Shown here one piece after another: positions 47,694 to 49,869 of a stretch of DNA of 64,000 nt. Location: NCBI GenBank assembly GCA_002269645.1, contig NIVC01001824.1, positions 172,073 to 236,072 on the forward strand, given 5' to 3'. The notes below the pieces were generated by a model. It was not told the DNA's origin. It ran no database searches and saw only the letters and a program-made list of their open reading frames with translations. Position 1 is the stretch's first letter; each line of letters starts with the position of its first letter. The stretch comes from Macrostomum lignano (lineage: Eukaryota). Position numbers and translations under genes: made by a program.

Positions 47694-49869
47694 GTTCTCA
47701 GCCAGGAAGCCAGCGCCAGTATAAAGTCCGGCGCTGAGAAGGATACAATTGGTTTAAGAGGAGGAGAGGCAATAAGAGTAACAGGTGAGAGTTTCTTACT
47801 CAGAGATTGAGTCAATTCTTCACCGCTGGCAAAGGACGGAACCAGAAGGATCTTACGTGTCAGACTGTCCGCTCTGAGTAGATCGATAGCCTCAGAGAGC
47901 AACTCTCGCCAGTGGTCTGTGCTGAGCAGCTCGTCCGGCAGGACCAGCACCGTTGACTGAGCGCATTGCCGGTTCCGCAGGGCAGCCGACCTCAGTAGGG
48001 ATGGTAAGGCTGACAGTGAGTACTCATGTACCTCTGTGATTGCCGGCAGTTTGAGGCCCTCGAAAGGCTTTGGGCAGAGTACCAGGTTCCGGCAGTCCCT
48101 GCTGATGATGAGCGAAACAGGTTGCTCAAAGGTGCTGGGTGAGTCATTCAGATGCGGCCTGTGGCGTTCCGGACCACCAGGGGAGTCTTCAGAGTCCGGC
48201 GATGGTAAGCGGCGTTTGGCAGGTGAAGCAGGCAGTCCCACCCGTGGAAGAGGCGGGGTCACAAAGAGGTCGTCAGCTGCCGACGTACAGCCGTTCTCAG
48301 GTGAGGCGACTTCGGTGGTCCCGCCTGCCGCCGGACTGCCGTCCGAAGCCGCAACCGCAGCCGCTGAGGGGTCGTTGCTGATCGTCGCATCGGCGCTCGC
48401 TGCCACGTCCCCGATGGTCGTCGCGCCGCCGTCCACTACCGAGTCGGCGTTGGTCTCCGTGCTCGTGCTTGCCGTGGGCTCATTGCTAGATGCTGCGATC
48501 GTGCTGGCTGTCGTGGTGTCGTTGTTGGAGCAGACGACCTCTGGGATCCTACGATGTTCGGCAGATTGGGCGCTCTCGTCGAGATCGACTGGTGCCATGC
48601 TTGCAGTCAGAGGGACTGCGGTGTTGGGAGTGGCTGTCTTGGTGGCACTGGGTGCAGATGGGGCCAGGGAAGCCCCGGTGGCACCGGTGTTGGGATCTTC
48701 GTGAGTCCAGCGGAAGGTCAAGTTGAATCGGCGGCCACGTTTGTGGTGTTGCGGGGAATTCGATGAAAAAAGTTGGCCTGACAGTCGCCTGACATGGTCA
48801 GAAGACTGCCATGAAATAGATCGAGAGATAGACAAGGGGAGGTCGCTGACTTAGCTTTTAGCTCGAAGGTTCTGGTGCACCCGATTGACACTGAAGCGAT
48901 GAAGGGTCGTTCGCCAAGCACGGCTTCGTCATCGGCATGCCAGCCGACGAATTGGGAGCCGTTCTGGTACACGTTGACGAGGACCGAGTTGAAGCGCTTT
49001 CCTGTCGCAGTTTCGACGGACTCGAGTAGAGGTTGGAGCCCTGAGGAGATCGGCCCGTTTGATCGTAGTTGTCGACCCGAGTAGCTGTAGTCAGGGCCGA
49101 ACCAAGCAATCAGTCGTGGTTCCGGTCGTCCTGACGCTGAAGAATGCCGATAGGCTAGGGGAGCGACTTCCTTGGCCAGGAATGACTCCAGTCGATCCGC
49201 TTGGTTCTTTTGCAGAAAGAAATTGTTCAGGCTGACAGTTGACTCGTCATCTAGGTTCCAGAAGTCCGTGCCCTCCTGGCGCGGTTGAGATTCCTCCACC
49301 GAGGTCATGGTCGGTGCAGCAGCGGCAGGCGTAGCGAGTAGGTCAATAACAGAGGGGTCATTAGACGGAGAATTCAACCGATCCAGAAATTTTGAGACGG
49401 TCGAGGCATCAAGTTTGCAGCGGAGGCCCACATGGTGGATGACTTGTCGCGCCACTGAGGCTAGATCTGGTGGTCCTTTGTCGTTACAGAGTTGTCGCAG
49501 TAGATTTTCAGACTCTTCGGTTGCCGCATCGTAGTGTGTCAGGATCTTCAGTAGTGAGCTCTCGATGTGGGCAACATTCGCTGCCTGTAGGTCTTGTAGG
49601 AGTTTGTCGGACGCGAATGCAGGGCGAAAGGCCTGGTCCAGTGATCGTGCGGCTTGTTGAAGAGAGCCATAGGCCCGTTGTGGCTCGACAATAATAGATT
49701 CGATGACTGCCCGATGGTGGTAGCATCTCAGGAGTTTGTCCAAAAGCAGTCTGGCTTGTTTGGAGGCGTCATCCAGGTGTTCGTTCTTTCTAGGTTGTCT
49801 CCTGTTCTGTTTTTGGTAGTTACTGTTGTAGAACGTGCGACCTCTCCATCTCCTGGAGGGATTCTCCAT
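47684..49869 (-). CDS. PLE ORF1: N-terminal domain, AlkB dioxygenase, low-complexity linker, alpha/beta domain (1-nt break at 48740-48742)
   Basis: AlkB motifs PRLIAWFG, YSYSG, FNSVLVNVY, GWHADDE, ASVSIG, FHRIP, then RFNLTFR in the next frame. Confidence 0.88.

What the first reader, a model, noticed from the sequence alone, without database searches (positions are those of the whole stretch)
48711..49190. Penelope-like retroelement encoding its own AlkB (ALKBH2/3-type) nucleic-acid demethylase
Seen: inside ORF1 of the PLE, upstream of RT-GIY-YIG, is an AlkB domain with all expected catalytic residues: HxD (HAD at 48939-48931), distal His (FFHRIP) and the R-x5-R 2OG-binding motif (RFNLTFR, 48730-48711, reached after restoring one A at 48740-48742). 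It is intronless, while nearby host genes are spliced. Established: ALKBH2/3 and plant-RNA-virus AlkB domains oxidatively remove m1A/m3C, lesions that block reverse transcription. Inference: this may be a retroelement lineage that carries a demethylase to protect or de-mark its own RNA/cDNA during target-primed reverse transcription. AlkB is not a standard PLE domain to my knowledge; novelty needs a database search.
Basis: partly seen in the sequence, partly recalled or inferred. Interest (0 to 1): 0.92.

Follow-up and report, generated by a model that had tools for sequence, protein, structure and literature searches.

The report
Penelope-like retroelement carrying AlkB demethylase
A broken copy of a Penelope-like jumping gene in a flatworm genome carries, in its first gene, an ALKBH3-type enzyme domain that strips methyl damage from RNA/DNA; five related, mostly intact elements from other samples carry the same domain, so it is a conserved accessory enzyme of a retroelement lineage that I could not find described in the literature.

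Summary
On the minus strand, about 49233-48710 encodes an AlkB domain (Pfam PF13532, E 1.3e-24). HxD, the distal His and RxxxxxR are all present, the last only after a 1-nt deletion in the A-run 48742-48740. Best sequence and fold match is human ALKBH3.

The domain lies in ORF1 of a Neptune-like Penelope-like element (PLE). This copy is dead. It is 5'-truncated and sits in a 21-bp minisatellite. It has frameshifts in AlkB and in GIY-YIG, and a 16-kb Polinton splits its RT.

AlkB is not a one-off capture. All five closest RT relatives with upstream sequence (47-52% RT identity; NJ clade 100% bootstrap), plus one sister-clade element, have ORF1 = N-terminal helical domain + AlkB + linker + C-terminal region. 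Four of these ORF1s are intact, and the catalytic residues are invariant in all.

ORF2 (RT-GIY-YIG) is always in the -1 frame behind a conserved U_UUA_AAC heptamer. A minimal hammerhead ribozyme is present.

Sister-clade relatives have the known esterase-type ORF1 without AlkB, so AlkB is a lineage-specific insertion. A closely related AlkB also sits in a LINE ORF1.

The proposed function, removing RT-blocking m1A/m3C from template RNA or ssDNA, is inferred and untested. I found no prior report of an AlkB-PLE.

The parts
49909..50389 (.). 5' flank: 21-bp minisatellite (about 23 copies, unit GAGAGGGAGACAGGTAG...). The same array continues beyond the 3' end of the element, so this is the insertion target.
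   Evidence: TRF; pattern search gave 26 matches, all in these two arrays, against 0.02 expected
48721..49896 (-). PLE ORF1, first open frame: a short remnant of the N-terminal region, the conserved helical domain and AlkB up to the frameshift. The copy is 5'-truncated; relatives have a further 130-230 Pro-rich residues and a 5' UTR.
49369..49770 (-). Conserved ORF1 N-terminal all-helical domain (invariant R-x3-H, F-x-P-A, H, K in 10 elements). It has no known family.
   Evidence: alignments A2/A5; no Pfam or PDB match; predicted helices at pLDDT 60-82
48710..49233 (-). AlkB (ALKBH3-like Fe(II)/2OG dioxygenase) domain: HxD 48939-48931, distal His 48765-48763, RxxxxxR 48730-48710
48740..48742 (-). 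A-run where one base is missing relative to the reading frame, separating the RxxxxxR strand from the rest of AlkB
   Evidence: The same shift is present in M. lignano gene models P0001/P0286 of this locus, which were spliced around it.
47684..48739 (-). ORF1, second frame: RGRRFNLTFRW, a long Ser/Thr/Ala/Pro-rich linker, then a C-terminal region (48145-47687) ending ...RTLN, then stop TAG at 47686-47684
47687..47693 (-). Slippery heptamer T_TTA_AAC in the ORF1 frame, immediately before the ORF1 stop. This is a putative -1 programmed ribosomal frameshift site into ORF2.
   Evidence: Same heptamer, same frame and same position in L001, L003, L004, L005, L006 and L012; TTTAAAT in L014; ORF2 in the -1 frame in all
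46634..47692 (-). ORF2, 5' part (-1 frame): PLE N-terminal motifs and the first half of RT, up to the Polinton insertion
30593..46633 (.). Secondary insertion, not part of the PLE: a Polinton/Maverick element with 6-bp target duplications TACAAC (46639-46634 and 30592-30587) and terminal inverted repeats
29413..30586 (-). ORF2, 3' part: second half of RT (YIDD), thumb, CX4CxxC linker, GIY-YIG endonuclease. A further frameshift lies at about 29745.
28999..29036 (-). Minimal type-I hammerhead ribozyme motif in the 3' UTR: GGC-CUGACGA-A-[GAGCC CAGA GGCUC]-GAAA, helix III palindrome ACCGGU, A17, then GCC
   Evidence: Read. My own strict pattern gave 1 hit in the window and 0 in 100 shuffles; sense-strand equivalents occur in L003, L004, L006, L014 and L020. 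Rfam missed it.
28823..28953 (.). 3' flank: the same 21-bp minisatellite (about 5.5 copies)

Best explanation
SHOWN. The window holds a dead, 5'-truncated copy of a two-ORF, Neptune-like Penelope-like retroelement. It is inserted antisense in a 21-bp minisatellite of what is evidently the Macrostomum lignano genome. ORF1 is a multidomain protein: a conserved helical N-terminal domain, an ALKBH3-like AlkB dioxygenase domain, a low-complexity linker and a C-terminal region. ORF2 (RT, Zn-finger linker, GIY-YIG) lies in the -1 frame behind a conserved U_UUA_AAC heptamer at the ORF1 stop. A minimal hammerhead ribozyme sits in the 3' UTR. AlkB is an inherited part of this PLE lineage, kept under selection. 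INFERRED. ORF1p is made in excess and an ORF1-ORF2 fusion arises by -1 frameshifting, in the manner of Gag and Gag-Pol. ORF1p coats the element's own RNA. Its AlkB domain uses Fe(II), 2-oxoglutarate and O2 to oxidatively remove N1-methyladenine and N3-methylcytosine-type base methylation from single-stranded RNA, and possibly from the ssDNA intermediate. This clears hard stops for the element's RT during target-primed reverse transcription. The window copy itself is non-functional.
For: AlkB identity: Pfam E 1.3e-24; ALKBH3 E 1e-28 against ALKBH2 1e-16, with no E. coli AlkB or FTO/ALKBH5 sequence hit at E<=1e-3; fold match to ALKBH3-ssDNA complexes at TM 0.76-0.79. PLE identity: the joined flanks restore one RT-GIY-YIG frame; 808 PLE-type homologues, best E 8e-179; hammerhead motif; minisatellite target. 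Lineage feature: L001, L003, L004, L005 and L006 all have N-terminal domain + AlkB + linker + C-terminal region upstream of RT. ORF1 is intact in L001 (1067 aa), L003 (956), L004 (1012) and L006 (883). HxD, the distal His and RxxxxxR are invariant. AlkB pairwise identity (33-52%) tracks RT identity (42-57%), Spearman 0.67. In the RT NJ tree the window and P0005-P0009 form a clade in 200/200 bootstraps, and all five members with known upstream DNA are AlkB+. Frameshift site: the heptamer is identical at nucleotide level and in frame in all elements, and ORF2 is always in the -1 frame. Precedent: PLE ORF1 separated by a frameshift (PMC8557442, Fig. 1 legend); a functional AlkB in orchid Ty3/Gypsy elements (PMC9289625). 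That m1A and m3C block reverse transcriptases, and that ALKBH3 prefers single-stranded substrates, is established knowledge rather than something tested here.
Against: No activity, substrate or expression data exist. This copy has a frameshift in AlkB, another in GIY-YIG, a Polinton in RT and a 5' truncation. No independent second copy of the same family was found in the host: P0001/P0286 are gene models of this same locus. Sister-clade PLEs transpose without AlkB (L012-L020 and others), so the domain is dispensable for PLE transposition in general. No conserved stimulatory RNA structure was found downstream of the heptamer. The AlkB-domain tree is poorly resolved, so one gain versus several gains cannot be decided. 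Hosts of the relatives are unknown (Logan/SRA runs, one unnamed NCBI assembly, one JGI metagenome).
Confidence: 0.55

Rival explanations
1. Epitranscriptomic counter-defence. The AlkB domain erases a regulatory or host-imposed RNA mark (m6A, or enzymatically written m1A/m3C) on the element's transcript, to escape decay or silencing, or on host RNAs. It is not there to repair chemical damage.
For: The only experimentally studied retrotransposon AlkB (orchid Ty3/Gypsy) demethylates m6A in ssRNA in vitro and was interpreted this way (PMC9289625). The AlkB module is shared between two retroelement classes, PLE and an APE-type LINE, at 52% identity, which suggests a common host pressure on TPRT elements.
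Against: The domain is ALKBH3-like. ALKBH5/FTO-type m6A erasers are not sequence hits at E<=1e-3, and FTO is only a remote fold match. The orchid domain is of the plant ALKBH9B/10B type, a different AlkB subfamily (PMC9289625).
Confidence: 0.2
2. The AlkB domain acts on host substrates that help the element indirectly, for example by demethylating tRNAs or other structured RNAs, or by repairing ssDNA at the nicked target, rather than acting on the element's own RNA.
For: ALKBH3 is known to act on tRNA and ssDNA (established knowledge). The best fold matches are ALKBH3-ssDNA complexes.
Against: Nothing in the sequence points to a tRNA or DNA-target role. The position in ORF1, the RNA-coating protein of TPRT elements, favours action in cis on the template.
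Confidence: 0.12
3. The AlkB domain is catalytically silent and serves only as a nucleic-acid-binding or structural module of ORF1p.
For: Accessory domains in retroelement ORF1s can lose their catalytic residues. In this clade the C-terminal region, which lies where the sister clade has an SGNH esterase, has no esterase motifs.
Against: All Fe- and 2OG-binding residues are invariant across six elements whose AlkB domains are only 33-52% identical. That is hard to explain without catalysis.
Confidence: 0.06
4. One-off event: a host ALKBH3 retrocopy or exon lies next to, or was captured by, this single PLE copy, and the apparent ORF1 is a chimera of no significance.
For: Only one locus of this exact family was seen in the host, and it is degenerate.
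Against: The same architecture, with the frameshift heptamer linking ORF1 to RT, is found in five other divergent elements from independent samples, four with intact ORF1. The N-terminal domain that precedes AlkB is also found in AlkB-less PLE ORF1s.
Confidence: 0.02

Closest known systems
Canonical endonuclease-positive Penelope-like elements, Neptune type (Arkhipova 2006; Craig et al. 2021, PMC8557442)
   Same: [quoted passage not shown] Sister-clade relatives have the SGNH esterase ORF1 already reported for Neptune-like PLEs (PMC3905857, PMC5408684).
   Different: ORF1 contains an AlkB dioxygenase domain. This is not among the PLE accessory domains listed in PMC8557442 (PHD, SAP, Josephin, zf-CCHC, coiled coil) and was not found in any paper searched. 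In the AlkB clade the C-terminal region shows no detectable esterase signature.
AlkB-encoding Ty3/Gypsy LTR retrotransposons of Phalaenopsis orchids (PMC9289625)
   Same: A retrotransposon lineage that has fixed an AlkB-family 2OG dioxygenase in an extra coding region; proposed to act on the element's own RNA.
   Different: Different retroelement class (LTR against PLE), kingdom (plant against animal) and AlkB subfamily (plant m6A-demethylase type against ALKBH3 type). The orchid domain sits in a separate additional ORF, not within a gag-like ORF1 coupled to RT by frameshifting.
AlkB domains in replicase polyproteins of plant RNA viruses (Flexiviridae and relatives; from my own knowledge, not checked here)
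   Same: A genetic element that replicates through RNA carries its own AlkB. These domains are reported to remove m1A/m3C from RNA, the model for the mechanism proposed here.
   Different: RNA viruses of plants with no reverse transcription. Their AlkB domains are usually described as closer to bacterial AlkB.
Human ALKBH3 (PDB 2iuw, 8jnk, 8jnr)
   Same: Best sequence match (E 1e-28, about 35% identity) and best fold match (TM 0.76-0.79); identical Fe and 2OG ligands.
   Different: A stand-alone cellular repair enzyme. Here the domain is embedded in a 730-1070 aa retroelement ORF1 between unrelated domains.
LINE ORF1 proteins with enzymatic modules (ZfL2-1 esterase ORF1p, PDB 4c1b; PMC3905857)
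   Same: A gag-position ORF1 that carries an enzyme domain. The sister-clade PLE ORF1 esterase matches 4c1b (profile E 5.5e-6). A LINE ORF1 with AlkB plus CCHC knuckles was also found (P0240 on L007).
   Different: Different RT and endonuclease class. No AlkB in a LINE ORF1 turned up in the papers searched either.

Membership tests
AlkB / ALKBH2-3 Fe(II)-2OG dioxygenases | Sequence membership: Pfam 2OG-FeII_Oxy_2 above the gathering score | tested here: met
   87.9 bits against 31.2, E 1.3e-24; relatives at E 1e-19 to 1e-32
AlkB / ALKBH2-3 Fe(II)-2OG dioxygenases | Fe(II) triad HxD...H and 2OG-binding RxxxxxR | tested here: met
   Present in the window, with RxxxxxR only after the 1-nt frameshift. 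Invariant in all six elements and nearly invariant in a 63-sequence alignment.
AlkB / ALKBH2-3 Fe(II)-2OG dioxygenases | Double-stranded beta-helix fold with nucleotide-recognition lid, closest to ALKBH3 | tested here: met
   AlphaFold pLDDT above 90 over residues 205-380. Foldseek top hits are ALKBH3 (E 9e-15, TM 0.79), then ALKBH2, then E. coli AlkB.
AlkB / ALKBH2-3 Fe(II)-2OG dioxygenases | Oxidative demethylation of m1A/m3C | not testable with these tools
   Needs an enzyme assay
Penelope-like elements (EN+, Neptune-like) | PLE-type RT homologous to known PLE proteins | tested here: met
   808 hits, best E 8e-179; hits carry PF28514, PF26215, PF00078 and PF01541 and include fish 'uncharacterized' PLE proteins. 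Pfam on the joined ORF2 gives RVT_1 at E 1e-5 and GIY-YIG at E 3e-4, both just under the cut-offs.
Penelope-like elements (EN+, Neptune-like) | C-terminal GIY-YIG endonuclease with an upstream CX2-5CxxC Zn-finger-like motif | tested here: met
   PCGSSRCKCC (CX4CxxC), then IIYGISCNQC...FYVGMT...R...H; aligned with relatives
Penelope-like elements (EN+, Neptune-like) | Hammerhead ribozyme motif near the 3' end or in the pseudo-LTR | tested here: met
   Window 29036-28999. The strict pattern gave 0 hits in 100 shuffles. Homologous positions occur in L003, L004, L006, L014 and L020. All have an extra unpaired A after CUGANGA. Rfam models did not detect them. Cleavage was not tested.
Penelope-like elements (EN+, Neptune-like) | Placement within the Neptune clade in an RT phylogeny with reference sequences | not tested
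   No Repbase or reference PLE set was available. The assignment rests on the linker motif and on the esterase-type ORF1 of the sister clade.
-1 programmed ribosomal frameshifting (ORF1/ORF2) | X_XXY_YYZ heptamer in the ORF1 frame at the ORF1/ORF2 overlap, with ORF2 in the -1 frame | tested here: met
   U_UUA_AAC in the window, L001, L003-L006, L012, L013 and L018-L021; U_UUA_AAU in L014
-1 programmed ribosomal frameshifting (ORF1/ORF2) | Downstream stimulatory hairpin or pseudoknot | tested here: inconclusive
   Individual small hairpins 10-16 nt downstream, z-scores -0.2 to -1.7; no consensus structure; pseudoknots not searchable
SGNH/GDSL esterase ORF1 (as in ZfL2-1 and Neptune-like PLEs) | Blocks I, II, III and V (S, G, N, DxxH) in the ORF1 C-terminal domain | tested here: not met
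   Met in sister-clade elements and L006. In the window and its clade the motifs are absent, and profile-profile comparison gives E 0.77.
Polinton/Maverick (the insertion that splits the RT) | 6-bp TSD, TIRs, protein-primed PolB, rve integrase, DJR capsid, A32-type ATPase | tested here: met

The most novel reading that the evidence does not exclude
AlkB is a mobile counter-defence module that circulates among target-primed retroelements of flatworm-like hosts. It occurs in PLE ORF1 in two sub-lineages and in an APE-type LINE ORF1. It would be retained because the host, or its chemical environment, marks or damages retroelement RNA with RT-blocking base methylation. That would reveal a methylation-based restriction of retrotransposition in animals and the elements' answer to it.
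Probability: 0.2. Interest if true: 0.85.

Novelty: new variant of a known kind. Interest (0 to 1): 0.66.

Why it matters
PLEs are the least understood retrotransposon class, and their accessory proteins are almost unstudied. A conserved ALKBH3-type demethylase coupled to RT by frameshifting would be the first such enzyme reported in an animal retrotransposon, and the first in a PLE. It parallels plant RNA viruses and orchid Gypsy elements. This suggests that base methylation of template RNA is a general obstacle, or a host weapon, against elements that copy RNA. The idea is directly testable, because intact ORF1s are available from relatives (L001, L003, L004, L006). The same module in a LINE ORF1 also documents domain exchange between retroelement classes. 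On the practical side, such ORF1s are currently mis-annotated as host 'Fe2OG dioxygenase' genes (P0001, P0130, P0144, P0286).

Tried and rejected
1. Searching the whole mended polyprotein returned nothing, because low-complexity linker words swamped the candidate list. That search was wasted.
2. P0001 and P0144 are not on record as called genes, so other M. lignano copies could not be fetched. No tool searches eukaryotic genomes by similarity, so copy number in the host is unknown.
3. Rfam found no hammerhead at the gathering or E-value thresholds. The motif was found by eye and with my own strict pattern.
4. The AlkB-domain NJ tree groups the retroelement AlkBs but with weak bootstrap. The origin (host ALKBH3-like or bacterial) and the number of gains are unresolved.
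5. RNAalifold found no conserved structure after the slippery site.
6. Clade-A C-terminal region against the esterase profile: no similarity, so I do not call it an esterase.
7. The N-terminal domain has no Pfam or PDB relative.
9. Literature look-ups of the run and assembly accessions found nothing, so the hosts of the relatives remain unnamed.
10. dN/dS was not attempted. The elements are 33-57% identical in protein, so synonymous sites are saturated, and no close within-family copies were available.
11. The reading 'the second frame change is a mutation' is rejected in favour of a natural -1 frameshift site.
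Full report
OBSERVATION

Read on the minus strand, 49896-48721 is one open frame. Its C-terminal 165 residues match Pfam 2OG-FeII_Oxy_2 (PF13532) at E 1.3e-24, 87.9 bits against a cut-off of 31.2.
- The HxD motif (H-A-D) is at 48939-48931.
- The distal His of FFHRIP is at 48765-48763.
- The frame runs into a stop after ...RNTTNVAADST.
- The neighbouring frame reads ...KRGRRFNLTFRWTHEDP. 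One extra A in the AAA run 48742-48740 joins the two frames into ...HRIPRNTTKRGRRFNLTFRW, the canonical AlkB C-terminus.

The mended domain hits human ALKBH3 at E 1e-28 and ALKBH2 at 1e-16. An AlphaFold model of the unmended window frame has pLDDT above 90 across the domain. Its best Foldseek matches are ALKBH3-ssDNA complexes (TM 0.76-0.79, rmsd 1.6-2.5 A), then ALKBH2, then E. coli AlkB, with FTO remote.

WHAT SURROUNDS IT

Downstream on the same strand, the frame that carries RFNLTFR continues through a Ser/Thr/Ala-rich linker and a C-terminal region, ending ...WLRTLN-stop at 47686-47684. A third frame opens at 47753 and encodes the N-terminal half of a PLE reverse transcriptase (LPKIHK..., GRPIVSGCSSE...), down to 46634.

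There the RT is cut by a 16,041-bp insertion (30593-46633). This insertion has the following features:
- 6-bp target duplications TACAAC (46639-46634 and 30592-30587);
- terminal inverted repeats;
- genes, examined piece by piece, for a protein-primed PolB, an rve integrase, a double-jelly-roll capsid protein and an A32-like ATPase.
It is a Polinton/Maverick.

Joining only the two flanks restores ...FEFDKMIFLQLRGTAMG.... The frame then runs through YIDD, the thumb, a CX4CxxC motif and a GIY-YIG domain, with one more frameshift at about 29745, and ends at 29413.

In the 3' UTR at 29036-28999 there is a minimal type-I hammerhead motif: CUGACGA, a 5-bp helix II, GAAA, a palindromic helix III ACCGGU, A17 and a 3-bp helix I. 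A strict pattern for this motif finds only this site in the window and none in 100 shuffles. Rfam models missed it.

The element is flanked on both sides by the same 21-bp minisatellite (49909-50389 and 28823-28953). ORF1 starts almost at the 5' junction, so this is a 5'-truncated insertion into a simple repeat, which is typical of PLEs (PMC8557442).

The host is evidently Macrostomum lignano. UniRef/MetaClust gene models P0001 and P0286 reproduce this locus, including minus-strand flank text, with only two substitutions in the PLE part. They were spliced around the same frameshift. Filamin-repeat exons lie on the plus strand nearby.

IS AlkB PART OF THE ELEMENT OR AN ACCIDENT?

The RT-GIY-YIG protein has 808 PLE homologues. 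I fetched the contigs of the closest ones. These were L001 (with the shorter L002), L003, L004 and L005, at 47-52% RT identity, from three Logan runs and one NCBI assembly. I also fetched L006, the contig of the best AlkB relative outside M. lignano (P0125, a JGI metagenome).

Each of these elements has, upstream of RT and on the same strand, an ORF1 with the same order of parts:
- a conserved helical N-terminal domain;
- AlkB (Pfam E 1e-19 to 1e-32);
- a low-complexity linker;
- a C-terminal region ending ...LN.

ORF1 is uninterrupted in L001 (1067 aa), L003 (956 aa), L004 (1012 aa) and L006 (883 aa). L005 has one frameshift.

HxD, the distal His and RxxxxxR are invariant, although the AlkB domains are only 33-52% identical. 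AlkB divergence tracks RT divergence (Spearman 0.67). In an NJ tree of 120 RTs, the window and P0005-P0009 form a clade in 200/200 bootstraps, and all five members whose upstream DNA is known carry AlkB.

This rejects the one-off-capture reading. Long-term retention with intact catalytic residues also argues for purifying selection.

EXPRESSION STRATEGY

In all six elements ORF2 is in the -1 frame relative to ORF1. The heptamer T_TTA_AAC sits in the ORF1 frame at the last two sense codons (window 47693-47687), or 1-6 codons before the stop. The -1 reading (F-K-L...) runs into the first conserved RT motif. The same heptamer, or TTTAAAT, is found at the ORF1 end of AlkB-less relatives.

Nucleotide-level identity of the Leu and Asn codons across proteins about 40% identical points to a -1 programmed frameshift site. 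A conserved downstream stimulator was not demonstrated.

WHERE AlkB CAME FROM WITHIN THE LINEAGE

The sister clade (15 RTs; the two clades together have 100% support) contains elements whose ORF1 has the same N-terminal domain and frameshift site, but an SGNH esterase at the C-terminus and no AlkB. These are L012, L013, L014 and L018-L020, with more distant members L021, L024 and L027-L029.

The esterase has invariant DSN, G, GxN and DxxH blocks. Its profile hits the ZfL2-1 LINE ORF1p esterase, PDB 4c1b, at E 5.5e-6. Esterase ORF1s in Neptune-like PLEs are already known (PMC3905857; PMC5408684).

L006 has both AlkB and the esterase. In the window's clade the C-terminal region has no detectable esterase signature. 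None of 50 further metagenomic PLE loci has AlkB.

AlkB is therefore an insertion into the linker of a pre-existing PLE ORF1. It is present in one whole sub-clade and in at least one branch of the sister clade. Whether this reflects one gain with losses or two gains is unresolved, because the AlkB tree is weak.

A 757-aa protein (P0240) combines a closely related AlkB (52% identical to that of L003) with CCHC knuckles. It is followed by an AP-endonuclease ORF2, so it is a LINE ORF1. M. lignano itself has further AlkB ORF1-like proteins: P0130 and P0144/P0287, the latter ending ...SSLN.

MECHANISM

Shown: the architecture, its conservation, and the ALKBH3-type active site.

Inferred:
- ORF1p is the abundant product, and ORF1-ORF2 arises by frameshifting.
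- ORF1p binds the element's RNA.
- The AlkB domain removes m1A/m3C-type methyl groups from single-stranded template RNA, or from the ssDNA intermediate, so that the RT is not blocked.

The ALKBH3-like rather than ALKBH5/FTO-like character favours lesion or hard-stop removal over m6A erasure. The orchid Gypsy AlkB precedent (PMC9289625), however, keeps an epitranscriptomic counter-defence role open. The window copy is dead: it has an AlkB frameshift, a GIY-YIG frameshift, a Polinton in RT and a 5' truncation.

NOVELTY

Full-text searches found no paper linking AlkB to PLEs or to LINE ORF1s. The PLE survey PMC8557442 lists other accessory domains but not AlkB. Repbase and Dfam could not be consulted.

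I rate this a new variant of a known kind: a canonical PLE with a new, conserved enzymatic accessory domain. Confidence is about 0.9 for the structural claim and about 0.5 for the proposed biochemical role.

Noticed in passing
window 30593-46633: A 16-kb Polinton/Maverick inserted into the PLE RT, with 6-bp TSD TACAAC and TIRs. Besides pPolB, rve integrase, DJR capsid and A32-like ATPase, it encodes a parvovirus-VP1-type phospholipase A2 domain (45137-45586, +; PF08398, E 7e-14). That is an unusual companion for a Polinton. Only single ORFs were examined; the element was not assembled or printed.
   Followed up: partly
L007:837-3834 (also L008-L010): An APE-type LINE whose ORF1 (P0240, 757 aa) is AlkB plus CCHC zinc knuckles, directly followed by an Exo_endo_phos_2 ORF2. 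Its AlkB is 52% identical to that of PLE L003, and the samples are from the same run series as PLE L001. This suggests exchange of the AlkB module between retroelement classes.
   Followed up: partly
L012:379-2187, L014:2-2110, L013, L018-L020: Sister-clade PLEs have an ORF1 with the same N-terminal domain and the same slippery heptamer, but an intact SGNH esterase (DSN, G, GxN, DxxH) homologous to the zebrafish ZfL2-1 LINE ORF1p esterase (PDB 4c1b, E 5.5e-6), and no AlkB. L006 has both domains.
   Followed up: yes
proteins P0130, P0144/P0287, P0205 (Macrostomum lignano): M. lignano has further annotated 'Fe2OG dioxygenase' proteins that look like retroelement ORF1s. P0287 ends ...SSLN like a PLE ORF1, and P0130 is 48% identical to the L005 AlkB. 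There is also a C2H2 zinc-finger protein with an AlkB domain (PAA82062.1) that may be a host gene.
   Followed up: partly
window 47684-53424 (-) / protein P0286: The 1309-aa public gene model P0286 is a chimera. It joins antisense reading frames of the filamin-repeat region (for example window 52939-53424, -) to the PLE ORF1, with artificial introns placed around the frameshift. This shows how such elements contaminate proteomes.
   Followed up: partly
window 29026; L003:882; L004:1718; L006:2772: All hammerhead motifs of this PLE group have an extra unpaired A between the CUGANGA core and helix II, and a palindromic helix III (ACCGGU, ACGU, ACGCGU, ACUAGU). This fits ribozymes that act as dimers. 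Rfam models do not detect them.
   Followed up: partly
window 51007-51525 and 52001-52850: Further long tandem arrays between the PLE and the filamin-like exons: a 24-bp unit with about 22 copies, and a short-period array that gives GSDM/ISDP-type repeats in translation. Together with the 21-bp minisatellite, the region is very repeat-rich.
   Followed up: no
window 52846-54593 (+), 28430-28810 (+): Filamin/ABP280-repeat coding segments on the plus strand on one side of the PLE (PF00630, E 8e-11), and a filamin-like segment with no Pfam hit on the other. The PLE and Polinton may lie antisense inside an intron of one host gene.
   Followed up: partly
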